Assembly: GCF_006345805.1 (NCBI RefSeq)
Contig: NC_043000.1
Coordinates: 163,370,001-163,434,000 of the forward strand
Origin: Octopus sinensis
Taxonomy: Eukaryota
Direction of reading: 5' to 3'
Length of the DNA stretch: 64,000 nt
The position numbers and the translations under genes are program-made. Numbering within the stretch: position 1 is the first letter of the stretch; each line of letters begins with the position of its first letter. Below, piece after piece: positions 14,810 to 63,891 of this stretch. The notes under the pieces were generated by a model, which saw only the letters and a program-made list of their open reading frames with translations, made no database searches and was not told the DNA's origin.

Positions 14810-15744
14810 CATATATATACATATATATATACATATATAATATAGCTACGATGCTACGAAGTAAACAAAGTTTTTGATATGTAAATAGATGCGTTAAAAA
14901 ATGAAGCAATGGTGTTAAGAGGTTTAAATGTGTTTTAATTTTTAATTATTTTTATTTGTTTTTCAAGTGTAGATGACGCGAATGGAGATTGACACAAAGT
15001 GAAAGCTGGTTCTGGCGGATATAAATAAAATAATAAAAATAATAACTAAAAGTGGATGGGAAAAAAGAGAGAAAAGCGAAAAAGAAAATGGTGAAAACAG
15101 TTAATGTTAATTTACATCACAAGTGCTAAATATCAAAAGCTATTTTAGCTGAGAAGATATTTCACAAGTCAAAAATAAAATAAAATTATTAAGATGAAAC
15201 TAAACGATTCAGACTGAATTCATCTGTCTTTAAAGAATGAGGGAAAAAAATACACCTCAGAACCACGCAGGAATTTCATAGGTATAGTGTTTCTATTTGA
15301 ACATAAAGTATAATTGTATACAGGTGTATCTGTACATATACACGTATGTATAATTAGTCTCTACTGTGTGTATGTATGTATGCATGTATGCGTGTGTGTT
15401 TGCATGCGTGCGGGCGTGCGTGTGTGTGTGTGTGTCTGTGTGTGCATGCATGTATGTATACATGTTTTGCTGTTTCTGGTTTTTCAAATTCCTCACCAAC
15501 AGAGAAAGGGCCGCTTCTTTCGCCGGAATTTAGACAACTTCATTGAAGTAGTCGTATGTGTGTGTTTCTGTATTTATGCATGCATGCACATATGTTTGCA
15601 TATAAATATGTGTGTATGTGCAACGGTATGTATGTGTGCAAGCGTGAATATCATGGCGGTGTGGATTAGTATGTTTTGGTTCATGGATGAGTATATAGAC
15701 ATATGTTTGTGTGTGTGCATGTATGTATATTCATTTATTACATG

Positions 15745-16400
15745 CTAAAACATCTGGAATATTTTGCATACTTTCACGATGCCTTTAATGGCTTGTAATT
15801 GTAATTTCCTAATTACCCGTCTCTTTACTTATTTTGTGAAACCCAGCTTCTTAAGATTGGTACTGAGATACTTGGTCACAAATTCAAGTACCCCAATAAT
15901 TATAGATGTAAACTTAAAAAACATAGTCAGAATGGAATAACTGCAGATTTCTTATCAGTTTAGCATAAATGTTTTCTTTCCCCTTAAACTTGAACACTGT
16001 GTTAACGTCTGATTTCCACTACTATGCACAATAGGTTTCTTCAGTCACAGATAATTAAGTCTGGTGTGTTACGCTTGCATTTTAATGAGGTCTTGACAGA
16101 GATATTCAACAAATATTCTTTAATATCATATACTCTTATGCTCTCCACAAGCCTGTATTTCTTAAAATTTTATCTTCATGATTATCCTTTCTAAGGTTTG
16201 TATTACACAGTCTCTTGGCCACGCCGTCATTCCTAGTAAGTAGATAACACCATCACGACATATCATGGCAACTACTTATGTATGATACCATAATATTCAG
16301 TGTTCAGGAACAGAGTTTGAATCGGTTACTGCATCTAAACGGTTTGGCTGCATCATTATCCCTTTTGTGACTTAGGTGTTTTACTGCTATTTCTTATTCC
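15745..16400 (-). pseudogene. Decayed RLE-type non-LTR retrotransposon C-terminus (Zn knuckle and restriction-like endonuclease)
   Basis: Minus strand: ..KLCS*TLNIMVSYISSCHDMS*WCYLLTRNDGVAKRLCNTNLRKD.., KEYLLNISVKTSLKCKRNTPDLIICD..VVEI.., KENIYAKLIRNLQ..SIIIGVLEFVTKYLSTNLKKLG. These match the CCHC / RHD.VAK / PD..E motifs. Confidence 0.7.
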
Positions 16401-16434
16401 TATACTGCAAAGCCTATCACTGAATATCAACTAA

Positions 16435-16575
16435 TTGCCTTTCCCTTACGGAGAGGGGAGGCTGGTATGCATGGGCGACTATTGGCCTTCTGTAAGCAAC
16501 CTTGTATGGACTTTTGCATCGGAGGGGAGCATTCTAGGTGCAATCCCATTGTAATTCGTGACCGAGGGGAGCCTT
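16435..16575 (-). mobile_element. SINE-like fragment (family 4) next to (TACA)n, duplicated at 26597-26746
   Basis: cggtcacgaatgacaatgggattgcacctagaa..gtcgcccatgcataccagcctcccctctcc, GC-rich repeat-like sequence present in both arms. Confidence 0.5.
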
Positions 16576-16592
16576 TACCGCTGATACATACA

Positions 16593-16626
<34 letters not shown>

Positions 16627-17245
16627 CATACATACATACATACATACATACATACATACATACATACATGCATAATGAGACCTCTGTTCATTGAACACTT
16701 TTCAGAAGAGTCGAAACTGAATCTGTTTACATTCTTGTCATTTCCTTTCATATTTGGTCTTTCTGTTATTTGAATTTGTTTCTGTGTCTCATTTGCGTTG
16801 AGTTGTGTATAACATATATTTCGTTTAATTAACGGCTAGAAATTAGCCACATGAAAAAATATATAAACTTATTTGTCCACTTCGATAATAGCTGAATATT
16901 CAATGCTATGGATTGGAGGAGAAAGAATTGAGCTTCGCCTTCTCTGCAAAATTGCGACTCGATTCATTGAGAGATGCACACAAACCCCTACACATGTTAC
17001 AATATCTTTATTCACAAGCATAACAAAAAACAAAAAAAGAAAACACAGCAAACTTGTACAAAGAACTCAATACCTTTCCGTAACATAGTAAATAATCGTA
17101 ATTCCTTTACAGTAGCTAAAAGCTATGATTACTTACAAATGTGCCCAGATTTCATATTAACGTTTCAAGTAGTTAAATGGTGTATGCATGTATCTATGTA
17201 TGGATGTATGTATGAATGTATATATGTACACACACATAAACCACA

Positions 17246-17302
<57 letters not shown>

Positions 17303-17393
17303 AATATATTAGAGACAAAACCACTATTTTGCAAAACAAACAAGGAAAGACTTAATCAATACATAAAATTTTAATAAATAGTCAAAAAAACCG

Positions 17394-17436
17394 CCACTAC
17401 AATTGTTTCTTGTCTTGATCGACAATCTTCAGGTGG
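17394..17436 (-). ncRNA. Minimal type I hammerhead ribozyme (PLE-associated)
   Basis: Minus strand: CCAC-CUGAAGA-UUGUC(gaucaa)GACAA-GAAA-C aauu GUA-GUGG. Intact core, 5-bp helix II, palindromic helix III (ACAAUUGU), GUA triplet, 4-bp helix I. Confidence 0.85.
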
Positions 17437-17884
17437 ACTTCCAATCTAAAATATCAATATTTTAAAATATAAAAATAATAATTTTAAAATAATTAAAGTA
17501 TGAATGAAAAAATATAAATATATAATCCATATATAACCTATATATAATCCATATATAATCAATATATAAACAATATATAAACTAATATAAACTAAAATAA
17601 ACCTATCAACAATTAAATATAAAATATAAAATATAAAATATAAAATATAAAACAAAACAAAAAAATAATAATAATATAATAATAAACTATATATACACCC
17701 ATACACATATACCTAATTATATATAACCATATCTAACTACATACACTAAATCACACACCTATATATATATCCCTATACATACACATAAAAACGTCTAGGC
17801 AACTATAAATAAATAAAATAGCTAAATACTTCAACACAATACTTATTCATACTCCCACACACACACACATACAACCCACATTCA

Positions 17885-19540
17885 CGCTCTAGAAAACGGA
17901 CATCACTTAAAATTATGAACGGAGAAATGGAATAAATGGAATTAAAAATTATATTCACTTGGTAAAACGAACACTACTTAAAAATTATGAATGAAACAAT
18001 GCAATAAAACAACAGACATCGCAAATAGACACAAATTACTACGAATTCCCTAACAAACCTACCATGATAAACCAAAACTCATAAAAACATATAATGATAA
18101 AATCTCCCTTTACTAAACTCTATAACATACCTATATAGCAATCCCCCTAACCTAAACATTCACACACAAATACACACACGTAAACCACACACCCACGACA
18201 TATACAAATACCCACACCACTTACACATACCTATACATACATATAAACCTCAACATATACTCCAAAAACCCACTCAACCCCACACAGACAAATAAACACA
18301 AAAATTATGAATGGATTCTTTTATAAAACTACCATGATAAGCTAAAACTCACAAAACATAAATGATAAAACCTCCCTTTACTAAACACTATAACATACTT
18401 ATATAGCAATCCCTTTAACCTATACATTCACACACAAATACACACACGTAACCACACACCCATAACAAATACAAACACCCACCCCACTCACACACACCCA
18501 CAAGTACATATAAGCCTCAACATATACACCAAACAAAATTACTTTACCAAGGAACTTAACATATGTATAAAAAGTATAACCGCTCTGGAAACGAACATCT
18601 GTTAAAATAATGAATGGAGAAATGGAATAAATGGAATTAAAAATAATATTCACGTGGCAAAACGAACACCACTCAAAAATTATGAATGAAACAATGTAAT
18701 AAAACAACCAACATCGAAAATAGACAAATTACCACGAATTCCCTAAAAAAACAATGATGAACCAAAACTCTTAAAAACATATAACGATAAAATCTCCCTT
18801 TGCTAAACTCTATAACAAACCTATATAGCAATCCCCCTAACCTAAACATTCACACACAAATACACACACGTAAACCACAGACCCACGACTTATACACATA
18901 CCTATACTAACTTATAAACCTCAATATACACCAAAAACCCACTCCCTCCCCACACAGACAAATTAACACATACATCCCAAACCTAAATAACAAACCCATA
19001 TACACATTCACACACAAACACACACACACGCAAAACACACACACACAACAGATACATATACTCCCTCACATATACGCATATACATACTCACTAAACTCGA
19101 TATATACAACAATATTTACACACCCACACTCATACAGATAAATAAATTATACAACTAAAAACTCACACACAATCTCATATACATAAAACACTCTCTATGA
19201 AAAACAACATTAATACATCGTAATTAACCAGAATATCAAAATAACAATATGACATAAGGAGAAATAAAATACATACTCACAAGTCAGTTTCAAATTATGA
19301 AGTGAAATTAAATTCTTAGCCGTTAAAAAAATCAAACCAAAATTACGTTACCATAGAAATATAACTTATGTAAAAAAAGAATACGCGCCATGGAAAGTAA
19401 ACGTCATTTAAAATTATGAATGGAGAAATAGAATAAATGGAACTAAAAACTATATCCACGTTGCAAACCAACACTACTTAAAAAAAAAAAAAAAAAAAAA
19501 TTTATTATGAATGGATTCTTTAAAAAACTACCATGATAAA
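17885..19540. repeat. Modular degenerate tandem array (~700-800 bp units), mirrored at ~23580-25230
   Basis: Unit starts at ~17885, ~18580 and ~19385. The motif (a)aaattatgaa occurs about 8 times. The sub-module ctccctttactaaac..tagcaatccc occurs at ~18104, ~18373 and ~18795. Confidence 0.8.
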
Positions 19541-20980
19541 TTATTATATACATTTATGAGCTTTAGCTCATCTTAGCAGCTCTAACAAACAACTTGCAGT
19601 AACCCAAATCTATTCTCGATGCCTGCCTTACTACTACACTATTCCATTCACAATTCCAAGCAACGCTAGTCCACCACCCGGTTACAATTCCCACTCCACC
19701 CATTCATTCACAATTTCAACGACGTTCGCCTCCACAGCGCTACATATAAGCCTCAACATATACACCGGAGATTCACTTTCACATCCGTGCGGATGGGTGA
19801 GAGTATACATTGAGTGTAGTGATGGGGCTCCCATTACTATATACATTTTGTACCTGTGTGGTAGTCTCCATGTGTATATTCACGCACGGGTATAAATGCA
19901 GGGGGTACACGCGCACGTCATGTGCGTGTACCCCCTCACATGTACATATGCATGCTATTTGGGCTCGATATGTGCAACAATGTAATCGCGCCCGCATAGA
20001 TGCATATGGGCGAGTTGCACAATCAAAATACGCACACGTGTGTGTGTGCGTTCCCTGGTTGTGCAATTCACCCATCTGGGTGTGAGTGGGTGTAAGCGTA
20101 TTGCTGTGGATGTCGAGCTTGATACGTATGTATATGAGTGTGTATTGGGGGGTTGTACGTATTTATTGTGTGCATGTGCTTCACGCACGTGCGTCCATGT
20201 ATGGATGAATATATTGGGATTGCTATGTGGGTGTAAATTGGGTATGGAGGGGGGAGTTTTGTCATTGTATGGGTGTGGGTTTCATTTGTGAAGGTGGTTA
20301 GTTGGTGATTTTTGGTATGTTCTGTATATTTGGGTTAGTTATGTATTATTCTAGTGTGTATAATTGTATACATATGATTGGTGTGAGTGGGATTACGCCC
20401 ATTTTTGGGGATGTATGTGTTTATTTGTCCGTATGGGGCGGGAGTGGCCGTTTGGTGTATATGTTGAGGCTCACATGCAATTCCAGGTACGCGCGAATGA
20501 AGTGGGCACTTATATTTGTTATGGGTGTGTTTACTTTATTATAACAGACAATACCCAAATAAAATCTGTCAATTCAACATACCAAATAAAAAACAAAAAA
20601 CAAAGGGATCTTAAACATTCACACATACATACAAAACTCAATAAAAACACCACTAAATAACACCCATCAACATATAAATATATATATATCCTCCAAAATA
20701 CATATAGCAAATGCATAATAAAAATACATAATAAAATAAAATAAAAATAAAAAAATAAAAAATACATAAATAAAGAAAATAAAAAAAATCTAATATAAAT
20801 TATTAAAGTTTTAACATACCATAAACTGTTATATTAATATACATTAAAAATGAACTAATTAGAACAAAGAAATATCAATAAAGACTAACTATAATTAAAG
20901 CCTAGACTACATAACCAAAAAATATATTATCTAAACTAATTTAAACTAAACTAAAGTAACCTAAAAGGGAACTATTATTG

Positions 20981-22590
20981 CTATTTATCATGAAACTTAT
21001 TATATAGGTAAAGTAACTTATGTCTGCATTTTATTTTGCGCTCTTCACCAGTATTAAGTAAATTATCATACTTATAAAATAAAATTACTTTAAACTCATT
21101 AGAGCATAAATAACAACAATTAGCTCCTATAGTATATGATTTAGTTTTACAAATTATTTCCCAATTAAACTATAATTATATTTAGTGATTTAAGACTCCA
21201 AATGTACTTACTAAGTCCGGTTGAGTTGATTAAGTCTTTATTTTTAAAAGAATTCATATGTTGTGCGATTCTTAGTTTTATTTTTGAGGAAGTAGAACCT
21301 ATATAAACCGCTTTGGGTAATTATTATTCTTAAAGTTATTATCATGTAATGTAACTATACATTTATACCTACATCGTTAATATCACAATTATTATTTAAT
21401 ATACAATTAGATTTATCTCTACATGTACAATTAATATAAGTCTTATCATTATTAATATTATTATCAAATAATTTCTTTTTATAAAAATTATTCAGTTTAT
21501 ATTTATTAAATGAAGAAATAATGTTACCAACATTATTAGTGGTAGAGTAACCAACTCCAAAATTATTAAAAGAGAAAATGTTTCTATATTTACGATTATC
21601 TCTAATAAATAGTTCTATAACATCTAAAATCTCTTTAATAATATTCGTTTTTACTTGATCTCCATAAGGAACTATTAACCAAATTTTATTCTTATTAACC
21701 TTATTATTATTATCATTATTATAAATATATTTATAATTCTTTATTTTATTAAAATTATTATCAGAATTATATCTATGTACAGCATTTAAGGAATTATTAA
21801 TATTATTAATTTTATCAATATAATTATTATAATAATTATTAAATTTATTTTTATTTTTATTATTCTTATTTATATTATTATTATTATTATATTTATTATT
21901 ATTATTATTCTTATTCTTATTTATATGTTTATCATTTTTATTATTTTTTTATAATATCTATTATTTTTACCACTAAACCTAACAAAATTATAATTATTAT
22001 TAGAAGTATCTCGAAAATTATCAATTAAATCTTTATCACTAATATTATAAAATTTAATAATCCTATTATAACCTGCCCCTCTAAGGGCCTCATTATAATA
22101 ATTAGCATGTTTATTAAAAATCTCTATATCATAAGAGAGTAATGAAATACGTTTACTTATATTATTAATCAACGATTTTTTAATAGAAAATGGGTGATTA
22201 CTATTAACATTTATATATCTAAGGTTCTCATTAAGTTTATGATATGGTTGTGTTTTACCTGTAATAAGATTAAAATTAGCATCTAAATAATTAACATTAT
22301 AATTCTCCTTATATATAGTAATACTTAAACCATATCTTTTAAAGAAACTATATAGTTTTTCTTATATACTTCTAGATTCCTATTAGTACAATTCTTTGTA
22401 ACTAGTAGAAGATCGTCTCTATATAAACCACCCTCTATCTTAAGATTTTCTAATTGGAGTTCAGATAAAAGAAAAATACCTACTAAATCAGTAGCCTGTG
22501 CAGAATCTGGTGCTCCCATAGGTATATCAAAATTTGGTATGTTGAATTGACAGATTTTATTTGGGTATTGTCTGTTATAATAAAGTAAAC
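20981..22590 (-). pseudogene. Penelope-like element ORF: 5'-truncated RT + linker + GIY-YIG endonuclease
   Basis: Motifs FDIPMGAPDSAQATDLVG, LYRDD, NYLDANFNL, SNHP, IWLIVPY, CTCRDKSNC..C, V(V)[44 protein letters not shown]. Stop at 20981. About five to six 1-bp frameshifts. Confidence 0.9.
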
Positions 22591-25500
22591 ACACCCATAA
22601 CAAATATAAGTGCCCACTTCATTCGCGCGTACCTGGAATTGCATGTGAGCCTCAACATATACACCAAACGGCCACTCCCGCCCCATACGGACAAATAAAC
22701 ACATACATCCCCAAAAATGGGCGTAATCCCACTCACACCAATCATATGTATACAATTATACACACTAGAATAATACATAACTAACCCAATATACAGAACA
22801 TACCAAAAATCACCAACTAACCACCTTCACAAATGAAACCCACACCCATACAATGACAAAACTCCCCCCTCCATACCCAATTTACACCCACATAGCAATC
22901 CCAATATATTCATCCATACATGGACGCACGTGCGTGAAGCACATGCACACAATAAATACGTACAACCCCCCAATACACACTCATATACATACGTATCAAG
23001 CTCGACATCCACAGCAATACGCTTACACCCACTCACACCCAGATGGGTGAATTGCACAACCAGGGAACGCACACACACACGTGTGCGTATTTTGATTGTG
23101 CAACTCGCCCATATGCATCTATGCGGGCGCGATTACATTGTTGCACATATCGAGCCCAAATAGCATGCATATGTACATGTGAGGGGGTACACGCACATGA
23201 CGTGCGCGTGTACCCCCTGCATTTATACCCGTGCGTGAATATACACATGGAGACTACCACACAGGTACAAATATGTATAGTAATGGGAGCCCCATCACTA
23301 CACTCAATGTATACTCTCACCCATCCGCACGGATGTGAAAGTGAATCTCCGGTGTATATGTTGAGGCTTATATGTAGCGCTGTGGAGGCGAACGTCGTTG
23401 AAATTGTGAATGAATGGGTGGAGTTGGGAATTGTAACCGGGTGGTGGACTAGCGTTGCTTGGAATTGTGAATGGAATAGTGTAGTAGTAAGGCAGGCATC
23501 GAGAATAGATTTGGGTTACTGCAAGTTGTTTGTTAGAGCTGCTAAGATGAGCTAAAGCTCATAAATGTATATAATAATTTATCATGGTAGTTTTTTAAAG
23601 AATCCATTCATAATAAATTTTTTTTTTTTTTTTTTTAAGTAGTGTTGGTTTGCAACGTGGATATAGTTTTTAGTTCCATTTATTCTATTTCTCCATTCAT
23701 ATTTTAAATGACGTTTACTTTCCATGGCGCGTATTCTTTTTTACATAAGTTATATTTCTATGGTAACGTAATTTTGGTTTGATTTTTTAACGGCTAAGAA
23801 TTTAATTTCACTTCATAATTTGAAACTGACTTGTGAGTATGTATTTTATTTCTCCTTATGTCATATTGTTATTTTTGATATTCTGGTTAATTACGATGTA
23901 TTTAATGTTGTTTTTCATAGGAGTGTTTATGTATATGAGATTGTGTGTGAGTTTTTAGTTGTATAATTTATTTATCTGTATGAGTGTGGGTGTGTAAATA
24001 TTGTTGTATATATCGAGTTTAGTGAGTATGTATATGCGTATATGTGAGGGAGTATATGTATCTGTTGTGTGTGTGTGTTGTTTGCGTGTGTGTGTGTTTG
24101 TGTGTGAATGTGTATATGGGTTTGTTATTTAGGTTTTGGGATGTATGTGTTAATTTGTCTGTGTGGGGAGGGAGTGGGTTTTTGGTGTATATTGAGGTTT
24201 ATAAGTTAGTATAGGTATGTGTATAAGTCGTGGGTCTGTGGTTTACGTGTGTGTATTTGTGTGTGAATGTTTAGGTTAGGGGGATTGCTATATAGGTTTG
24301 TTATAGAGTTTAGCAAAGGGATTTTTATCGTTATATGTTTTTAAGAGTTTTGGTTCATCATGGTTTTTTTAGGGAATTCGTGGTAATTGTCTATTTTCGA
24401 TGTTGGTTGTTTTATTACATTGTTTCATTCATAATTTTTGAGTGGTGTTCGTTTTGCCACGTGAATATTATTTTTAATTCCATTTATTCCATTTCTCCAT
24501 TCATTATTTTAAAAGATGTTCGTTTCCAGAGCGGTTATACTTTTTATACATATGTTAAGTTCCTTGGTAAAGTAATTTTGTTTGGTGTATATGTTGAGGC
24601 TTATATGTACTTGTGGGTGTGTGTGAGTGGGGTGGGTGTTTGTATTTGTTATGGGTGTGTGGTTTACGTGTGTGTATTTGTGTGTGAATGTATAGGTTAA
24701 AGGGATTGCTATATAAGTATGTTATAGTGTTTAGTAAAGGGAGTTTTATCATTTATGTTTTGTGAGTTTTAGCTTATCATGGTAGTTTTATAAAAGAATC
24801 CATTCATAATTTTTGTGTTTATTTGTCTGTTGGGGGGGTTGGGTTTTTTTGGAGTATATGTTGAGGTTATATGTATGTATAGGTATGTGTAAGTGGTGTG
24901 GGTATTTGTATATGTCGTGGGTGTTGGTTTACGTGTGTGTATTTGTGTGTGAATGTTTAGGTTAGGGGGATTGCTATATAGGTATGTTATAGAGTTTAGT
25001 AAAGGGAGATTTTATCATATATGTTTTTATGAGTTTTGGTTTATCATGGTAGGTTTGTTAGGGAATTCGTAGTAATTTGTGTCTATTTGCGATGTCTGTT
25101 GTTTTATTGCATTGTTTCATTCATAATTTTTAAGTAGTGTTCGTTTTACCAAGTGAATATAATTTTTAATTCCATTTATTCCATTTCTCCGTTCATAATT
25201 TTAAGTGATGTCCGTTTTCTAGAGCGTGAATGTGGGTTGTATGTGTGTGTGTTGGGAGTATGAATAAGTATTGTGTTGAAGTATTTAGCTATTTTATTTA
25301 TTTATAGTTGCCTAGACGTTTTTATGTGTATGTATAGGGATATATATATAGGTGTGTGATTTAGTGTATGTAGTTAGATATGGTTATATATAATTAGGTA
25401 TATGTGTATGGGTGTATATATAGTTTATTATTATATTATTATTATTTTTTTGTTTTGTTTTATATTTTATATTTTATATTTTATATTTTTATTTAATTGT

Positions 25501-25809
25501 TGATGGTTTATTTAGTTTATATTAGTTTATATATTGTTTATATATTGATTATATAGGATTATATATAGGTTATATATGGATTATATATTTATATTTTTTC
25601 ATTCATACTTTAATTATTTTAAAATTATTATTTTTATATTTTAAAATATTGATATTTTAGATTGGAAGTCCACCTGAAGATTGTCGATCAAGACAAGAAA
25701 CAATTGTAGTGGCGGTTTTTTTTGACTATTTATTAAATTTTTATGTATTGATTAAGTCTTTCCTTGTTTGTTTTGCAAAATAGTGGTTTTGTCTCTAATA
25801 ATATTTTAT

Positions 25810-25842
<33 letters not shown>

Positions 25843-26508
25843 TATATATATATTATATATATGCGTGTGTGTTATGGTGTGTACATATATACATTCATAC
25901 ATACATCCATACATAGATACATGCATACACCATTTAACTACTTGAAACGTTAATATGAAATCTGGGCACATTTGTAAGTAATCATAGCTTTTAGCTACTG
26001 TAAAGGAATTACGATTATTTACTATGTTACGGAAAGGTATTGAGTTTCTTGTACAAGTTTGCTGTGTTTTCTTTTTTTGTTTTTTGTTATGCTTGTGAAT
26101 AAAGAATTGTAACATGTGTAGGGGTTTGTGTGCATCTCTCAATGAATCGAGTCGCATTTTGCAGAGAAGGCGAAGCTCAATTCTTTCTCCTCCAATCCAT
26201 AGCATTGAATATTCAGCTATTATCGAAGTGACAAATAAGTTTATATATTTTTTCATGTGGCTAATTTCTAGCCGTTAATTAAACGAAATATATGTTATAC
26301 ACAACTCAACGCAAATGAGACACAGAAACAAATTCAAATAACAGAAAGACCAAATATGAAAGGAAATGACAAGAATGTAAACAGATTCAGTTTCGACTCT
26401 TCTGAAAAGTGTTCAATGAACAGAGGTCTCATTATGCATGTATGTATGTATGTATGTATGTATGTATGTATGTATGTATGTATGTATGTATGTATGTATG
26501 TATGTATG

Positions 26509-26541
<33 letters not shown>

Positions 26542-26985
26542 GTGTATGTATGTATGTATGTATGTATGTATGTATGTATGTATGTATGTATGTTTGTATC
26601 AGCGGTAAAGGCTCCCCTCGGTCACGAATGACAATGGGATTGCACCTAGAATGCTCCCCTCCGAAGCAAAAGTCCATACAAGGTTGCTTACAGAAGGCCA
26701 ATAGTCGCCCATGCATACCAGCCTCCCCTCTCCGTAAGGGAAAGGCAATTAGTTGATATTCAGTGATAGGCTTTGCAGTATAGGAATAAGAAATAGCAGT
26801 GAAACACCTAAGTCACAAAAGGGATAATGATGCAGCCAAACCGTTTAGATGCAGTAACCGATTCAAACTCTGTTCCTGAACACTGAATATTATGGTATCA
26901 TACATAAGTAGTTGCCATGATATGTCGTGATGGTGTTATCTACTTACTAGGAATGACGGCGTGGCCAAGAGACTGTGTAATACAA
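22532..26985. repeat. Right arm of ~4.4 kb inverted repeat
   Basis: Mirror of 16198-20587, also visible as mirrored ORFs in the track (e.g. 20040-20291 + vs 22827-23078 -). Differs by scattered 1-bp indels, microsatellite lengths and a few substitutions. Confidence 0.95.
25670..25712 (+). ncRNA. Minimal type I hammerhead ribozyme (mirror copy)
   Basis: ccac CTGAAGA ttgtc gatcaa gacaa GAAAC aatt GTA gtgg, identical to the left-arm copy. Confidence 0.85.
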
Positions 26986-26999
26986 TAAAAATTACACAC

Positions 27000-27521
27000 A
27001 TGTGTAGAACGATCCGATGGTGTTGCTGGGCTTTGTATATTTTCATAGCAGCAATGGTTACGAAGATAATCCACTATAATAATACTCTTGTGTTTATGAA
27101 TGAGAAAGGAAAGGGTGATAGATGAATAAGGAAGGAAGGGGTGATGCTATACTTGGTAGTTGGATGATGAAAATTGTACGCGGAAAAAATAAATCAAACA
27201 GCGTTTCAACTGTGTGAATATATGTGTGTGTATTTAAAAAGGGGGAACGTGAATGTGTGTGTGTGTGTGTGTGTGTGCAATGGAAGTGAGATGGTTCATC
27301 TTTGTTTGCTTAGTATTTGGGTTTCTTTTTTGATTTGGTTGAATTGTGGTTGGTTTTATTTTTGTTGTTGCTCAGTTATTTTTAGTGTTTTGACAGAAAA
27401 AGTCATTCTAAAATTATTTTTTTTAACGTTAACGTGCCCAAACCAGTCGAATGCTCACACAGAGAAGGTTTTACATCCACATCATCCAAACCAACCGGGG
27501 GAAACCGGGCTTCGCTGCTAG
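27000..27521 (+). mobile_element. Putative Helitron-like 3' end
   Basis: CCGG-gggaaa-CCGG hairpin (27495-27508) followed by CTAG|T at 27518-27522. The 5' boundary is not defined. Confidence 0.4.
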
Positions 27522-28449
27522 TATATGTATATGAATATGTATAGTGAACATTACTAATTAAATAAAATTAATTATATAATTCTTGTCAAGACAAATGTAG
27601 CTTAAGACTGATTAGTGGAAAGCACAAGTAAAATTGTAAACAAACGTTTTAAAATACCGGAAGGAATACTTAGATAAGTTGTAAAATTCGGTGGTATTTT
27701 AAATTACAGATATAATTATAGTTAAGGCAAAGTTAGATAAAAATAATTGAATTCTTTATGAATGATCGAATGGTAAACAAGTTGAATTGTAAACAAGACC
27801 CGTAGTGCCAGAAGTAAAAAAAAAAAGAAGAAAAAGAAACAGTGTGCCTCCAAGAAGATTTTGGAGAGTTGGAAGGATGGGAGAGACATACTCAATCTAT
27901 ATGTAAATTATACATATGAAGTATTTATAGGGATATTTATAAAGATGAACCGAAAACCAAGGAGTTGAGAGGGAGAAAGTTATAAATTTTTAATGATATT
28001 TAAGGTGATAAATACGAGGATTATATATTAAATAAGTTAAAAATATAAAAGATAAACACATTTTCCATGAATTTCTTCCAAGCCTTAATAATTGTCTCGC
28101 TTCATAAAATGTTCAATTAATATTCTTCTGGTTATGTCATGGTGAAAATTTTTAAAAAGAAGGAAGTAATGCTTTAAGCATGTTGATTCAAAAGGTTTTT
28201 CGTATTTTCATTGATGATTGTTTGGTAACTTGTATCTTCCTATCATTCCGTCAATTTGATACATTTCGTCCAATCGTTGCTGAACATATAAACATCAATT
28301 GTTTATCCTTTATTTTACAGCTTTGATGATGAGTGGGGAAAAATCTATAATTAGAGCTATTTACGCTACCTTTGGAAAACAGGATTGAGAGCAAAGGTAG
28401 CGGGAAAAAAAAATAATGATGTGGAAGGCCCACGAATTGTCAACGAACG

Positions 28450-29150: not shown

Positions 29151-29291
29151 TCAACAGAAATTACCAGTGAACAGATATCTTAAGATCTTTGTAATAAGTA
29201 AGCAACATCAGCATAAAATAAAAGATTCGCGTTTTCAACTAATTATCAAATCTTTCGAAAGAAAGAAAGATAGATAGCTAGATAGATAGAT

Positions 29292-29340
<49 letters not shown>

Positions 29341-29383
29341 TATAGATATATAGATAGATAGACAAACAGACAGACAGACAGAC

Positions 29384-29534
<151 letters not shown>

Positions 29535-29820
29535 AATATAGATAGATAGGTTACAGATCCAATCCAACAGTGGGATGGTAAGGATCTGTAAAACTTTCCA
29601 GATGTATTGAGTTCTTTTTACTTGCTCATTATAAATTACTTGCTTATGTGTGTGTGTATCTGTCTGTCTCTCTATGTCTGCGTACATTTATGGTGGTATA
29701 TGTATATACATCTATGTACATACATATGCATATATACATATATACGCAAATGCACATACATATGCATGCATACATAAATACTTACACTTACATATATGTG
29801 GATATATACTACATGCATGT

Positions 29821-37505: not shown

Positions 37506-38045
37506 GTCTAAAGGAATTAGGAAGAAACTTTACTTTTACTTTCTTTATGTTATCTATGGTTTGCTGCTAGCCGAGACTTGATCGATCACAACTTACGCAA
37601 CCGGGTGAGGGACTCAGATGTTAAAAGACCTGAGACCTCAGAAACAAAACATCCCTGACAATGCATCTCAGTGAATCTGCAAAATGTATCTTAAAACTAT
37701 TTATATAATATAATATCTACAGGGTTCGGCAGTTTTTTAAGGTCATTTGTATGAATTTAGTAAATGACGCAAAGCTCATCAAACAAAAGCTGTATTTGAA
37801 ACCAAATTGGTACGAATAATCTTGAGAATCCTTTTATCTCACGTATTCAATGAATACACCGTTTGCATCAACGGGTGCTTCAGTAGGGTGTTGGATGCGT
37901 TGATTTGTCTGAATCAGATGAACTTCAACAATTTTGGACATAGTGCTGGTTATGGCAAACTTGATGTCTGACAATATTTATATATCATAAATAAAGAACA
38001 GCAAGACAGACAGACAGTCAGATAGATAGATAGATAGATAGATAT

Positions 38046-38084
<39 letters not shown>

Positions 38085-38118
38085 TATAGATAGATAGATA
38101 GATAGGTAGATAGATAGG

Positions 38119-38153
<35 letters not shown>

Positions 38154-38154
38154 G

Positions 38155-38209
<55 letters not shown>

Positions 38210-38242
38210 GTAGATAGATAGATAGATAGATAGATAGGTAGG

Positions 38243-38335
<93 letters not shown>

Positions 38336-38749
38336 GGATAGACAAGCAGAGAGACACAGACAGACAAATCAGTAGATTGGTCGGTAGAAAGGAAGAGAGA
38401 GACATACATACACACATGTATATTTCCGTTTATATATGTGTATGTGTGTGTATGCATATACACCTACAAGTGTTGTGTGTGTATGGGGGGGGGGGACGTT
38501 TACTTATAAATTTAAATATATATATATATGTACGGGTGCTTCTGTTTCTGGAAGGCCGAGATCGGAAAGTTCGAGGTCTGGCTGTTCTAGCAACTCGAAA
38601 CTCAGTTTTTCAGTGGTGTAGGAGGTCGTATGTGGGCTTTCATGGTCGTGTATCAATAACAATTGTTTTGACACTAGACCTCGGCGCTTGGTTCAAATTG
38701 TTGCTTTGTAGTAGTTGGCAAGAATCCCTTTGTAGCCTACACTGGTGAT

Positions 38750-46125: not shown

Positions 46126-46567
46126 TTGCCTTATCTATATTTTAGTATTTTGAGCGTGGATTTACATTAGTCTGTACGTTGCGTTTATCTGACTTAATGG
46201 TAACGTATGTACTATACAAGAGTCTAGCAGTTTAGTGTGTGTGAGTGAGTGCGCACGCGTACGTGTGTGTGTGTGTGACTGAGTCAATGTTATAAACGGT
46301 GAGTGTATATGTCTGCATATGTGACGTAAAAACTTTTGCTTGTCTGTGTGCGTAGTCGTGCTATTTAGGAATCCATTTTATAGCTTTTACTTGTTTCAGT
46401 CATTAGACCGAGGCCATGCTGGGGCACCACTTTGAAGAATTTTTAGTCGAATGACTCGACCCGAACTGCTAAACCGGTTGTCAGGCGGAGTAAGCGCATA
46501 ACTGTGAAACAAGGTGGAAAAAAGAGTACTCAAATACCAGAGGTAGAGTAATATGCTTTATTTAAAA

Positions 46568-46646
46568 GCAGCAGAAATATAACAAAACTGTCCGACGAAC
46601 GGGAACGTGAAACTCTGAGTAACAGCTTTTGTTATATTTCTGCTGC
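46568..46646 (+). ncRNA. Hammerhead ribozyme candidate (U4C core variant) with ~24-bp helix I
   Basis: ctgt CCGACGA acg(ggaa)cgt GAAAC tctga GTA acag, enclosed by gcagcagaaatataacaaaa / cttttgttatatttctgctgc. Confidence 0.7.
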
Positions 46647-46677
46647 ATTAAAAAGAAAAAGTATATATGTGTACATA

Positions 46678-46813: not shown

Positions 46814-46953
46814 TATTCGAGACAAAACCACTATTTTGCAAAACAAACAAGGAAAGACTTAATCAATACATAAAATTTTAATAATATAAAATTTTATGTA
46901 TTGATTAAGTCTTTCCTTGTTTGTTTTGCAAAATAGTGGTTTTGTCTCGAATA
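46814..46953. repeat. Perfect 67-bp-arm fold-back of the PLE terminus
   Basis: Arms 46814-46880 and 46887-46953, 6-nt spacer. The arm matches 17307-17373 with one mismatch. Confidence 0.95.
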
Positions 46954-47090: not shown

Positions 47091-47113
47091 ACTTATATAT
47101 TTTTTCTTTTTAT

Positions 47114-47193
47114 GCAGCAGAAATATAACAAAACTGTCCGACGCGAACGGGAACGTGAAACTCTGAGTAACAGCTTTTGTTATATTTCTGCTG
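47114..47193 (+). ncRNA. Second copy of that hammerhead, with a 2-nt insertion in the core
   Basis: Same sequence but CCGACGCGA; probably inactive. Confidence 0.55.
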
Positions 47194-47245
47194 TGCATTT
47201 AAAAAAAAAAATATATATGTATATAATATATATATATATATATAG

Positions 47246-48444: not shown

Positions 48445-49336
48445 TATATATACATACACACACACATATATATACGTACACACCACACATAAATGCAAAC
48501 ATGCATATACGCATACAAATATAGAAACATGCTTACATACACGCGCGACACGTATATATATATATATATTCACGTATATATTAGCGTTAAAGAGCGCACG
48601 AGTGCGTATGCTAATTTTAAACATACGCTCGGCATTGTTCTTAAGGTTCCATATACATACCCAATGCATTATCCAGAACAACAACATTATAAAGGAGAGA
48701 CAACAACAACAACAACAACAACAACAATTATAAGAACAACTGCAGCAACAACAACAACAATAGCAATTGTAACAATAACAATGTTGCTATCCCATAACCG
48801 ATATTCCACATGGTTGCTCAATAAAATAACCAAAACAGGGCGGTATTGTCTTGTCGCTAGGGGTCGCTCCGGTTCGTTCATACACACCCATAATACAATT
48901 TCTACTTGATGAATTCAATAGCTTTTCAATGAACAGTTCAGGTAGAAAGAAAACATATGACGTAGAAAACAGCTTCTCATTGGACTGGAGTATACGTGTA
49001 TACATACATACAAACATACATACAATCACACACACACATACACACATATATATACAAACATACACACATAGATACATACACAGACGCACACATACACTTA
49101 TATATGTATATAAATATTTACATATATATGTATCTATAGTAAGTGCACATACATATATATAAATACATAAATAGATAAATATATACATACATATATATGC
49201 ATATATATATATGTGTGTGTATATACAGAAATATACTACACACACATTTATACAAATTATATATGTATGTGTGTGTATGTTTGTAAGTAGATAGACAGAC
49301 AGAGATATACAGATAGATAGAAAGACAGACAGATAG

Positions 49337-49407
<71 letters not shown>

Positions 49408-49655
49408 GCATACACATACACTCACACACACACGTACGCATGCACACACACACAGTACATACACTCTCTCACTCACACACATATATACATATACACATAT
49501 GTATATGTACATACATATACAGATACATATATATGTCCATATATATGTGTGTGTGTATGTATGTATGTATGTATGTATGTGTGTGTGTGTAAGTACGTTC
49601 ACAGGCTCTATGAATGGCCGTTTGGAAAGAACATTAATATTTAGATTTACCTAAC

Positions 49656-63578: not shown

Positions 63579-63891
63579 TACATAGGGGCTACCCAAAACG
63601 AAAGGAAGCGATTAGCCGCGCACCTACATACTTTCAGAAATAGAAATAAGTTTAGCTTGACCGGATTAAGTAAATATATTTGGGAGCTTAAAGATAATGA
63701 TATTAGTTTTGATTTAGAATGGAAATTCCTAGCCTCCGAATCTTCAAACAATGTAAAAAATAAGATATGTCACTTGTGCATCAATGGAAATCTTTCATAT
63801 TAAAGGCTAGAATACCGCAACTCAATGCTAGAGAAGAGCGAAATAAACCTGCCTGCACAAGGATAAATTTGCCTTCTCTAGATATAAATAA
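63579..63891 (+). pseudogene. Penelope-like GIY-YIG endonuclease 3' fragment
   Basis: [45 protein letters not shown]; homologous to the endonuclease at 20981-21310. Confidence 0.85.

What the first reader, a model, noticed from the sequence alone, without database searches (positions are those of the whole stretch)
16198..26985. 10.8-kb quasi-palindrome built around a Penelope-like retroelement
Seen: two ~4.4 kb near-identical inverted arms flank a 1.94 kb spacer holding PLE RT-GIY-YIG coding sequence, with a hammerhead and the PLE terminus pointing outward in each arm. Known: PLEs often carry an inverted copy of their 3' pseudo-LTR at the truncated 5' end, usually a few hundred bp long. Inference: this is a much larger version, with a ~3.6 kb 3' region. 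Read-through transcription would give kilobases of dsRNA (ADAR/Dicer substrate), and the DNA could extrude a cruciform.
Basis: partly seen in the sequence, partly recalled or inferred. Interest (0 to 1): 0.9.

Follow-up and report, generated by a model that had tools for sequence, protein, structure and literature searches.

The report
Head-to-head Penelope-like retroelement palindrome
Two copies of an unusually long Penelope-like jumping gene sit head-to-head in what looks like an octopus-type genome, forming a 10.8-kb near-palindrome; this layout is already known for these elements, but here the mirror-image arms also run about 1.1 kb into ordinary host DNA, which remains unexplained.

Summary
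Arms 16198-20587 and 22532-26985 are inverted copies around a 1,944-nt spacer. They differ mostly by 1-nt indels and microsatellite length, which looks like long-read consensus noise.

The spacer, on the minus strand, encodes the C-terminal ~55% of an RT/GIY-YIG protein of the Hydra clade of Penelope-like elements (PLEs). It keeps all 45 invariant residues of its relatives. Its only defects are five frameshifts.

Each arm carries one outward-pointing minimal hammerhead. Rfam misses it. A covariance model built from hammerheads of independent Hydra-clade loci finds exactly these two sites (24 bits, E~3e-5).

The PLE terminus lies about 85 nt past the hammerhead and abuts a (TA)n tract, the clade's usual target. 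A 120-nt mini-dimer of the same terminus at 46816-46935 supports this end point.

So the PLE part is 17310-25799. It is a head-to-head pair of 5'-truncated copies with 3.55 kb between stop codon and hammerhead, against about 85 nt in relatives.

The outer ~1.1 kb of each arm is non-PLE DNA that is also mirrored. I could not separate three explanations for this: a pre-existing host palindrome, read-through transduction, or a later DNA-level inverted duplication.

An assembly artefact is unlikely but cannot be tested without reads. This is a known kind of structure, large and young. Interest is modest.

The parts
16198..16583 (-). Outermost segment of the left arm (E2). It is non-PLE, GC-balanced and unique in the window, and mirrors 26600-26985.
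   Evidence: It holds 3 of the 6 clean substitutions between the arms.
16584..16674 (.). (CATA)n microsatellite, 23 units. Its mirror at 26433-26599 has 42 units.
16675..17248 (-). Left-arm segment E1. It is non-PLE with balanced composition and mirrors 25863-26432.
17249..17309 (.). (TA)n tract abutting the left PLE terminus; the inferred target microsatellite.
   Evidence: The (TA)n preference of the Hydra clade is described in PMC8557442.
17310..17392 (-). PLE 3' terminus, about 85 nt downstream of the hammerhead cleavage site (left copy).
   Evidence: The same 63-75 nt recurs as an inverted mini-dimer at 46816-46935, again next to (TA)n.
17393..17437 (-). Minimal type-I hammerhead motif, left copy: CCAC-CUGAAGA-UUGUC/GAUCAA/GACAA-GAAA-CAAUUG-UA|GUGG.
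   Evidence: Custom model R1 scores 24 bits, E~2.6e-5. Motif scan. Not found by Rfam.
17438..17857 (-). AT-rich minisatellite stretch of the PLE 3' region (left copy).
17858..19481 (-). Degenerate tandem array in the PLE 3' region. The period is about 690 nt, with ~2.5 units at 81-90% identity. It is GT-rich and C-poor on the PLE sense strand.
19482..20587 (-). Inner part of the left arm. It includes ~800 nt that are CA-rich on the sense strand and contain array units in reverse orientation.
20588..20980 (-). Unique AT-rich 3' UTR directly after the stop codon. It contains no hammerhead.
20981..22531 (-). 5'-truncated RT/GIY-YIG ORF of a Hydra-clade PLE. It matches residues ~322-712 of homologues and covers RT motifs 4-5, thumb, an N-rich insertion of ~107 aa, the CxCX5C linker and GIY-YIG. 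It has five frameshifts, and the stop codon TAG is at 20983-20981.
22532..25252 (+). Right copy of the PLE 3' region: the inner part and the tandem array. It mirrors 17858-20587.
25253..25668 (+). AT-rich minisatellite stretch (right copy).
25669..25713 (+). Minimal type-I hammerhead motif (right copy).
   Evidence: 24 bits, E~2.6e-5
25714..25799 (+). PLE 3' terminus (right copy).
25800..25862 (.). (TA)n tract abutting the right PLE terminus.
25863..26985 (+). Outer, non-PLE part of the right arm: E1', (TATG)42 and E2'.
46816..46935 (.). Mini inverted dimer of the same PLE 3' terminus. It has two ~60-nt halves with 3' ends outward and ~8 nt between them, and is embedded in (TA)n.

Best explanation
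The inner 8.5 kb (17310-25799) is a head-to-head pair of 5'-truncated copies of one unusually long Penelope-like retroelement of the Hydra clade.

The longer copy lies on the minus strand (22531 to 17310). It keeps the C-terminal ~55% of the RT/GIY-YIG ORF, a 0.4-kb unique 3' UTR and a 3.3-kb non-coding 3' region. That region holds reverse-oriented units, a ~690-nt-period tandem array and an AT-rich minisatellite. It ends with a minimal, dimer-type hammerhead and an ~85-nt terminus.

The shorter copy lies on the plus strand (22532 to 25799) and holds only the 3.3-kb 3' region. Both 3' termini point outward, and each abuts a ~60-nt (TA)n tract, the clade's usual target.

Most likely mechanism (inferred, not shown): a single retrotransposition into a (TA)n tract. 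The element's GIY-YIG nuclease nicked both target strands, and both 3'-OH ends primed reverse transcription of the element RNA from its 3' end. Alternatively, one cDNA snapped back on itself. One cDNA reached 5.2 kb and the other 3.3 kb, and their 5'-truncated ends were joined bluntly at 22531|22532.

The copy is young. The arms differ almost only by noise-like indels, and the ORF fragment keeps every invariant residue.

The outer 1.05-1.12 kb of each arm is host-like DNA beyond the (TA)n. It needs an extra step. My order of preference is:
(a) the (TA)n target lay at the centre of a pre-existing host inverted repeat;
(b) the template was a read-through transcript that carried ~1.1 kb of 3' flank;
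(c) a later DNA-level event extended the palindrome.
For: Shown:
- Arm geometry.
- ORF identity. There are 76 homologues, the best at E=2e-54. The window keeps all 45 columns that are invariant across itself and 29 homologues, including GLYRDD, CxCX5C, the YIG motif (V-Y where GIY is expected), R, H, CxxC-E, N-E and CxH.
- Fold of the family. A high-confidence model of homologue P0001 (pLDDT 89) matches TERT best by Foldseek (3du5_A, E=1e-9). This fits PLE RTs being sister to telomerase (PMC8557442).
- Hammerhead. A model built only from nine hammerheads of four other Hydra-clade loci hits the window at exactly the two arm sites. The score is 24 bits, E~2.6e-5, and the next hit scores 11 bits.
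- Terminus. The same terminal 63-75 nt recurs as an outward-facing mini-dimer inside (TA)n at 46816-46935.
- Relatives. In L004 and L002 the hammerhead lies 85-90 nt after the stop, and the element ends ~30 nt later next to TA-rich DNA.
- An independent parallel. L007 holds a 4.5-kb head-to-head palindrome of near-full-length copies whose 3' ends abut (TA)n on both sides, plus mini-dimers of hammerhead-bearing termini. Its arms differ by ~15 substitutions outside the central junction, with no indels there, so the divergence is genuine.
- Continuity of the long 3' region. There is no hammerhead or terminus near the stop codon. The sense strand is C-poor (2-9% C) through ORF, UTR, array, minisatellite and terminus, apart from the reverse-oriented inner ~800 nt. 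The outer segments are balanced like the flanks.

From the literature:
- A PLE protein cleaves and extends both target strands in vitro (PMC11167929).
- Rotifer PLEs have 0.9-1.5-kb captured spacers before the 3' repeat, and N-rich insertions (PMC3846280).
Against: - The arms overshoot the inferred PLE terminus by ~1.1 kb, and no PLE mechanism is known to mirror that much flank.
- There is no target-site duplication and no (TA)n at the outer ends 16197/26986.
- The two (TA)n tracts are almost equal in length (61 and 63 nt). This comes for free if the arms are copies of each other, but needs exact-centre targeting under option (a).
- Hydra-clade elements are described as <3 kb, whereas this unit would be >=6.3 kb.
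- No second full copy of this family was available to show that the 3.3-kb region really belongs to it. The O. bimaculoides copies end in assembly gaps or at the edge of the retrievable locus.
- The hint that the outer segment is older is weak: 5 of ~10 substitution events fall in 23% of the length, p~0.05 by my hand calculation.
- Rfam and Pfam give no support on their own.
- No reads were available, so the assembly cannot be verified.
Confidence: 0.55

Rival explanations
1. A DNA-level inverted duplication. An ordinary 5'-truncated PLE insertion next to host segment E was later partly duplicated in inverted orientation. The mechanism would be fold-back repair of a break or replication template switching. 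Its end points were arbitrary (20587/22531 and 16198/26985), and whatever lay to the right of 22531 was lost.
For: - It explains without extra assumptions why the arms include (TA)n and 1.1 kb of non-PLE DNA.
- It explains why the two (TA)n tracts are the same length.
- It explains why there is no target-site duplication, and why the outer ends fall in unremarkable sequence.
- Junction microhomology is 0-1 nt, which is compatible with end joining.
Against: - It makes the PLE incidental. Yet the polarity (3' ends outward), the family's own mini-dimer in the same window and the L007 palindrome all show that this element type makes such structures itself.
- No other inverted duplication occurs in the window.
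- It requires two template switches, or a break plus a deletion.
Confidence: 0.22
2. An assembly artefact: a fold-back or chimeric long read, or a mis-walk through a repeat, in a noisy long-read assembly. In that case the genome holds only one arm.
For: - The arm differences are dominated by 1-nt indels, and the ORF has frameshifts only. The consensus is therefore error-prone.
- PLE tandem and inverted structures are known to trouble assemblers (PMC8557442, PMC3846280).
Against: - Missed-adapter or fold-back reads give palindromes without a spacer. Here 1,944 nt of unique sequence separates the arms.
- Both outer junctions lead into different unique flanks inside a gap-free contig.
- The (TATG)n tract differs by 76 nt between arms, which one molecule read twice would not give.
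- The same architecture exists in an accurate, independent assembly (L007).
Confidence: 0.13
3. The whole 4.4-kb arm is element sequence. On this reading the true 3' terminus is at 16198/26985, the (TA)n and (TATG)n tracts are internal microsatellites, and the outer 1.1 kb is an extended terminal region or a stable 3' transduction that now travels with this subfamily.
For: - Both arms end at exactly the same base, as expected if both cDNAs started at one RNA 3' end.
- PLEs can carry captured host DNA (PMC3846280, PMC6431247).
Against: - The mini-dimer at 46816-46935 ends at the (TA)n, not beyond it.
- Relatives end ~30-45 nt after the hammerhead.
- The outer segments have host-like composition, unlike the C-poor element.
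- The outer flanks are not (TA)n.
Confidence: 0.08

Closest known systems
Hydra clade of C-terminal EN+ Penelope-like elements (Craig et al. 2021, PMC8557442)
   Same: The protein diagnostics present in the retained part all match: a divergent RT4, GLYRDD, the CxCX5C linker, GIY-YIG without the CCHH insert, and CxxC and CxH around the conserved E and N. The termini abut (TA)n, and a hammerhead sits in the terminal region.
   Different: The clade is described as short (<3 kb). In relatives fetched here, the hammerhead lies ~85 nt after the stop and the terminal repeat is 74 nt. In the window, 3.55 kb of repeats lies between stop and hammerhead, and an N-rich ~107-aa insertion sits between thumb and linker.
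[quoted passage not shown]
   Same: The arrangement is head-to-head, with 3' ends and hammerheads outward, 5' truncation and a blunt central junction.
   Different: The inverted portion is 3.3 kb of element sequence, against ~0.2 kb in the rotifer examples cited. The mirror symmetry also continues 1.1 kb beyond the element.
Adineta vaga Pen1, Pen3 and Pen4 (Arkhipova et al. 2013, PMC3846280)
   Same: These elements have a long spacer (0.9-1.5 kb of captured DNA) between the ORF and the 3' terminal repeat. They also have asparagine-rich insertions between RT and EN, and long inverted structures that assemble poorly.
   Different: They belong to a different PLE clade and host phylum. The spacer here is 3.5 kb and is built of tandem and inverted repeats rather than unique host DNA.
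L007 palindrome
   Same: It is also Hydra-clade. It is a 4.5-kb head-to-head palindrome with both ends abutting (TA)n, and mini-dimers of termini lie nearby.
   Different: Its arms are near-full-length ORFs with a short 3' end. Its flanks beyond the (TA)n are not mirrored. Its arms differ by real substitutions (~0.7%).
L1 twin-priming inversions
   Same: Both target strands prime reverse transcription, which gives an inverted 5' segment.
   Different: Twin priming inverts a different, upstream part of the RNA and does not duplicate the 3' end. Here both arms are the same 3' sequence.
Foldback / long-TIR DNA transposons and hairpin-RNA loci
   Same: They have long, near-identical inverted arms around a spacer, and can produce hairpin RNA.
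   Different: There is no target-site duplication and no transposase. The arms are built from a retroelement 3' region.

Membership tests
Penelope-like element (EN+) | Reverse transcriptase related to telomerase RT | tested here: met
   The window fragment aligns to RT motifs 4-5 and the thumb of ~700-aa homologues with all invariant residues kept. An AlphaFold model of homologue P0001 (pLDDT 89) has TERT as its top Foldseek match (3du5_A, E=1.1e-9). Pfam RVT_1 gives no hit. A PDB sequence-profile search gives only a marginal RT hit (E=1.9).
Penelope-like element (EN+) | GIY-YIG endonuclease fused to the RT | tested here: inconclusive
   The motifs are present and invariant: V-Y where GIY is expected, Y-I-G, R, H, E and N. 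The secondary-structure order in the model (beta-beta-alpha-alpha-beta-alpha, residues 592-683) matches the GIY-YIG topology. There was no Pfam hit, and I ran no separate fold search of the isolated domain.
Penelope-like element (EN+) | Terminal repeats (pLTRs), direct or inverted, from tandem or inverted partial copies; 5' truncation | tested here: met
   Inverted 3' regions flank a 5'-truncated ORF.
Penelope-like element (EN+) | Hammerhead ribozyme motif in the terminal repeat | tested here: met
   Model R1, built from nine hammerheads of four other Hydra-clade loci, scores 24 bits (E~2.6e-5) at 17393-17437 (-) and 25669-25713 (+) only. A loose motif scan finds such a motif in ~4% of shuffled windows. 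Rfam models give no hit. Cleavage activity was not tested.
Penelope-like element (EN+) | Optional 30-40-nt 'tail' at one end | not tested
   The two termini are identical within noise, so no one-sided extension is visible. Other copies would be needed to define it.
Hydra clade | N-terminal RWK motif, and DKT in place of DKG | not testable with these tools
   The window copy is truncated at about residue 322. Both motifs are present in the full-length homologues.
Hydra clade | CxCX5C linker; no CCHH insert in the EN domain; CxxC and CxH around the conserved E and N | tested here: met
   The window reads CTCRDKSNC ... CYLCSNE ... LNTGEE ... CRH, and these columns are invariant in alignment A1. 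The features are defined in PMC8557442.
Hydra clade | Insertion into (TA)n | tested here: met
   Both inferred termini abut (TA)n tracts of ~30 units (17249-17309 and 25800-25862), and the mini-dimer at 46816-46935 also sits in (TA)n. The outer ends of the whole palindrome do not.
Hydra clade | Short element (<3 kb) with the hammerhead close to the ORF | tested here: not met
   The distance from stop codon to hammerhead is 3.55 kb. It is 85-90 nt in L002 and L004.
Type-I hammerhead ribozyme (metazoan/PLE minimal form) | Core CUGANGA...GAAA, cleavage triplet UH, helices I and II, and a short palindromic helix III allowing dimers | tested here: met
   The motif reads CUGAAGA, then a 5-bp helix II, GAAA, CAAUUG, UA|, and a 4-bp helix I. 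ACAAUUGU is self-complementary. The monomer does not fold into the active form, as expected for dimer-type motifs (PMC4209133). Catalysis is untested.
Foldback / TIR DNA transposon | Target-site duplication, and a transposase or family-typical TIR ends | tested here: not met
   There is no direct repeat at 16197/26986. The only coding similarity in the unit is to the PLE protein.
L1-type twin-priming inversion | The inverted 5' segment is a different, non-duplicated part of the element | tested here: not met
   Both arms are the same 3' sequence.

The most novel reading that the evidence does not exclude
The mirror symmetry beyond the element is itself the product or the target of PLE activity. 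There are two versions:
- The element's nuclease preferentially nicks the tip of a cruciform extruded by a (TA)n-centred host palindrome, so that PLEs home to palindrome centres and enlarge them.
- Read-through PLE RNA carrying more than 1 kb of host flank is copied from both target strands, giving a retroelement-driven way to make long inverted duplications of host DNA.

In a cephalopod-like genome, such loci would be ready-made sources of kilobase hairpin RNA for ADAR and small-RNA pathways.
Probability: 0.2. Interest if true: 0.55.

Novelty: new member of a known kind. Interest (0 to 1): 0.3.

Why it matters
If the structure is real, it is a very young and unusually large example of how Penelope-like elements build palindromes.

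- It documents a Hydra-clade element in a cephalopod-type genome whose 3' region has grown from ~0.15 kb to ~3.7 kb.
- It offers a clean case for asking whether both-strand priming makes these dimers.
- It raises the question of why host flank is mirrored as well.

Long, near-perfect inverted repeats are fragile in DNA. When transcribed, they give long double-stranded RNA, which is relevant in animals with heavy A-to-I editing. Practically, it is also a warning: such loci stay poorly polished in long-read assemblies, and generic Rfam and Pfam models miss both the ribozyme and the protein.

Tried and rejected
- Rfam at gathering threshold on the whole window, and at E<=10 on 15500-27700, gave no hammerhead. 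The only hits were microsatellite-driven miRNA look-alikes.
- Pfam on the window translation and on seven homologues gave nothing meaningful.
- ARAGORN found no tRNA.
- MFE folding of the single hammerhead was uninformative, as expected for dimer-type motifs.
- I tried to learn the natural 3' region of octopus copies from the O. bimaculoides locus L001. One copy runs into an N gap 130 nt after the stop. The other reaches the edge of the retrievable locus. DNA similarity to the window arms is limited to microsatellites.
- An exact look-up of ten window ORFs in the protein collection found none on record, so no independent assembly of this locus could be fetched.
- Exact-pattern scans of metagenome contigs for the PLE terminus and for the outer segment E2 gave no hits.
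- I searched for a target-site duplication, for an extension of the palindrome into the flanks, and for microhomology at the junctions. There is none beyond 1 nt.
- I considered that the ~690-nt array units might be retrozyme-like units with decayed hammerheads. No hammerhead-like core lies in them.
- I considered a standalone PLE fragment inserted at the centre of an older palindrome. I rejected this because the spacer has no hammerhead or terminus of its own.

Full report
**Observation.** The window holds one large quasi-palindrome. The left arm is 16198-20587 (4,390 nt) and the right arm 22532-26985 (4,454 nt). The spacer is 20588-22531 (1,944 nt). BLAST gives 98.6% identity over 4,019 columns and 98.7% over 472. 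Nothing comparable occurs elsewhere in the 64 kb. The window has no Ns. The arm ends are sharp, and the flanks show no mirrored similarity even at low stringency.

A base-by-base alignment shows what the 1.4% difference consists of:
- 17 mismatched columns, several of them next to indels;
- about 34 indels of 1-2 nt, often in short runs;
- three length changes in the (TATG)n tract, which has 23 versus 42 units.

Indel-dominated differences are the signature of long-read consensus error, not of sequence evolution. The true identity of the arms is therefore probably well above 99.5%.

**The spacer.** On the minus strand the spacer encodes a 5'-truncated protein. A homology search with the frameshift-corrected translation found 76 relatives. 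The best scores E=2e-54 at 37% identity over 97% of the query. Most relatives are ~700-aa proteins on 2.3-3-kb contigs. The closest at 59% identity is an Octopus bimaculoides protein. tblastn places residues 322-703 of a 712-aa relative on 22531-21017, in five pieces whose frames shift five times. I saw no stop codon except those created by the shifts.

In an alignment with 29 full-length relatives, the window sequence keeps all 45 invariant columns. The family shows the diagnostics that Craig et al. give for the Hydra clade of Penelope-like elements (PMC8557442):
- RWK and DKT, seen in the homologues only, because the window copy is truncated;
- GLYRDD;
- a CxCX5C linker (CTCRDKSNC in the window);
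- a GIY-YIG domain without the CCHH insert;
- CxxC and CxH around the conserved E and N.

Pfam sees nothing. A PDB sequence-profile search gives only a marginal RT hit. An AlphaFold model of a homologue is confident (pLDDT 89), and its best structural matches are telomerase RTs (3du5_A, E=1e-9). This fits the known sister relationship between PLE RTs and TERT.

Between thumb and linker, the window copy has an extra ~107 N/K/I-rich residues. The octopus protein has a similar insertion. Such asparagine-rich insertions are documented in rotifer PLEs (PMC3846280).

An ORF with frameshifts only and every invariant residue intact fits a young copy read through a noisy consensus.

**The hammerhead.** Rfam finds no hammerhead, at gathering threshold or at E<=10. 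A core pattern search and a helix-aware scan nevertheless find one motif per arm, reading outward: CCAC-CUGAAGA-UUGUC/GAUCAA/GACAA-GAAA-CAAUUG-UA|GUGG. A loose scan of this kind hits ~4% of shuffled windows, so I made an independent test.

Loci encoding full-length relatives were fetched. They carry hammerheads of the same design:
- L002: 88 nt after the stop.
- L004: one in each 74-nt terminal repeat, 85 nt after the stop.
- L005: two of the same design, one ~180 nt upstream of the first of two tandem ORFs and one between them.
- L007: several.

A covariance model built from nine of these, none from the window, hits the window at exactly 17393-17437 (-) and 25669-25713 (+). The score is 24 bits, E~2.6e-5, and the next hit scores 11 bits. 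Helix III (ACAAUUGU) is self-complementary, the dimer-type design described for metazoan PLE hammerheads (PMC4209133). The monomer does not fold into the active form.

**Where the element ends.** About 85 nt past the cleavage site, each arm runs into a (TA)n tract (17249-17309 and 25800-25862). The last 63-75 nt before that tract recur at 46816-46935 as a tiny inverted dimer. Its 3' ends point outward, its centre is 8 nt long, and it is again embedded in (TA)n. Hydra-clade elements are reported to insert into (TA)n. In L002, L004 and L007 the element ends 30-45 nt after the hammerhead, next to TA-rich DNA.

The PLE part of the palindrome is therefore 17310-25799. Its sense strand is C-poor (2-9% C) through ORF, UTR, tandem array, minisatellite and terminus. 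The exception is the inner ~800 nt of the arm, which holds array units in reverse orientation. The outer segments E1 and E2 have balanced composition like the flanks.

There is no hammerhead or terminus near the stop codon. ORF, 0.4-kb UTR and the 3.3-kb arm region thus read as one transcript-derived unit. It has 3.55 kb between stop and hammerhead, against ~85 nt in relatives. A long spacer before the 3' repeat has precedent (0.9-1.5 kb in rotifer Pen1). Even so, this is larger, and it is built from a ~690-nt-period degenerate array.

**Mechanism.** The topology is the known PLE arrangement of an inverted 5'-truncated copy placed at the 5' end. The same 3' sequence appears twice, the termini face outward and the truncated 5' ends meet at 22531|22532. 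A purified PLE protein cleaves and extends both target strands in vitro. This gives a direct route: two cDNAs from one insertion event, joined at their 5' ends. A snap-back route has also been proposed.

L007 shows that kilobase versions exist. It is a 4.5-kb palindrome of two near-full-length copies, with both ends abutting (TA)n. Outside its central junction its arms differ by ~15 substitutions and no indels, so it is real and older. L1-style twin priming does not fit, because it does not duplicate the 3' end.

**The unexplained part.** The arms continue 1.05-1.12 kb beyond the terminus, through (TA)n, 570 nt, (TATG)n and 386 nt. They end at the same base on both sides, with no target-site duplication and no (TA)n outside. 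This sequence does not recur elsewhere in the window. Three readings remain open.

(a) The (TA)n target was the centre of a pre-existing host palindrome. A weak hint supports this. By my hand count, five of about ten substitution events lie in the outer 23% of the arm, three of them in the last 386 nt (p~0.05). Against it, the two (TA)n halves are almost equal in length.

(b) The RNA template was a read-through transcript carrying 3' flank. The shared end point supports this. The non-(TA)n outer flanks and what is known of internal RT initiation in PLEs count against it.

(c) A later DNA-level inverted duplication copied the PLE and its flank together. This explains the symmetry cheaply but makes the PLE incidental.

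**Artefact.** The consensus is noisy, and PLE arrays are hard to assemble. However, fold-back or missed-adapter reads give palindromes without a spacer. Here a 1.9-kb spacer separates the arms, both outer junctions enter distinct unique flanks in a gap-free contig, and one microsatellite differs by 76 nt between arms. I put the artefact at about 0.13. It cannot be settled without reads.

**Host.** The closest protein and several shared repeats (79-94% identity to an O. bimaculoides chromosome locus) point to an octopod-like genome.

**Verdict.** However, the arms exceed the element, and large inverted PLE structures are already known. I rate it a new member of a known kind, with modest interest of 0.3.

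Noticed in passing
window 46816-46935: A tiny inverted dimer (two ~60-nt halves with ~8 nt between them) of the same PLE 3' terminus as in the arms. Its 3' ends point outward and it sits inside a long (TA)n tract. It looks like an extremely 5'-truncated double insertion.
   Followed up: yes
window 46560-46650 and 47100-47200; L001 17380-17524: Two direct copies of a ~100-nt hairpin-forming repeat (GCAGCAGAAATATAACAAAA...TTTTGTTATATTTCTGCTGC) flank the (TA)n tract that holds the mini-dimer. The same repeat occurs in the O. bimaculoides locus at 88-94% identity. It is probably a SINE or MITE with a TA-rich tail.
   Followed up: partly
window 63579-63779 (+): A second, unrelated fragment of a Hydra-clade GIY-YIG domain (34% identity to residues 607-674 of P0001). 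It has no DNA similarity to the spacer, and the window end cuts it off.
   Followed up: no
window 21684-22050 (-): An asparagine/lysine/isoleucine-rich insertion of ~107 aa lies between the RT thumb and the EN linker. The O. bimaculoides relative P0042 has a similar insertion, and full-length relatives from other sources lack it. It resembles the N-rich insertions of rotifer PLEs.
   Followed up: partly
L007 7688-12201, 7180-7500 and 12270-12440: An unrelated ENA assembly holds a 4.5-kb head-to-head palindrome of near-full-length Hydra-clade copies, flanked on both sides by (TA)n. Those tracts contain further mini-dimers, at least one of them made of a hammerhead-bearing terminus.
   Followed up: yes
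L003 (ENA ERZ25073769, 46-kb contig): A full-length Hydra-clade ORF sits among densely packed short genes. These include an EsV_1_7_cys-domain protein, an rve integrase and DUF5679. The context looks viral or algal rather than animal.
   Followed up: no
L001 16272-16848: A 577-nt self-complementary palindrome (90%) lies in the O. bimaculoides locus next to a (TA)n tract, ~750 nt upstream of a full-length Hydra-clade copy. Its origin was not determined.
   Followed up: no
one search hit list: Most relatives of this protein come from marine metagenome and other ENA assemblies, on 2.3-3-kb contigs. The Hydra clade may therefore be far more widespread than the 23 families described in 2021.
   Followed up: no
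window 29205-29589, 37950-38463, 48787-49602: Long tetranucleotide microsatellite arrays (AGAA/AGAT types) generate spurious 150-270-aa 'ORFs'. The window contains no convincing host exon.
   Followed up: no
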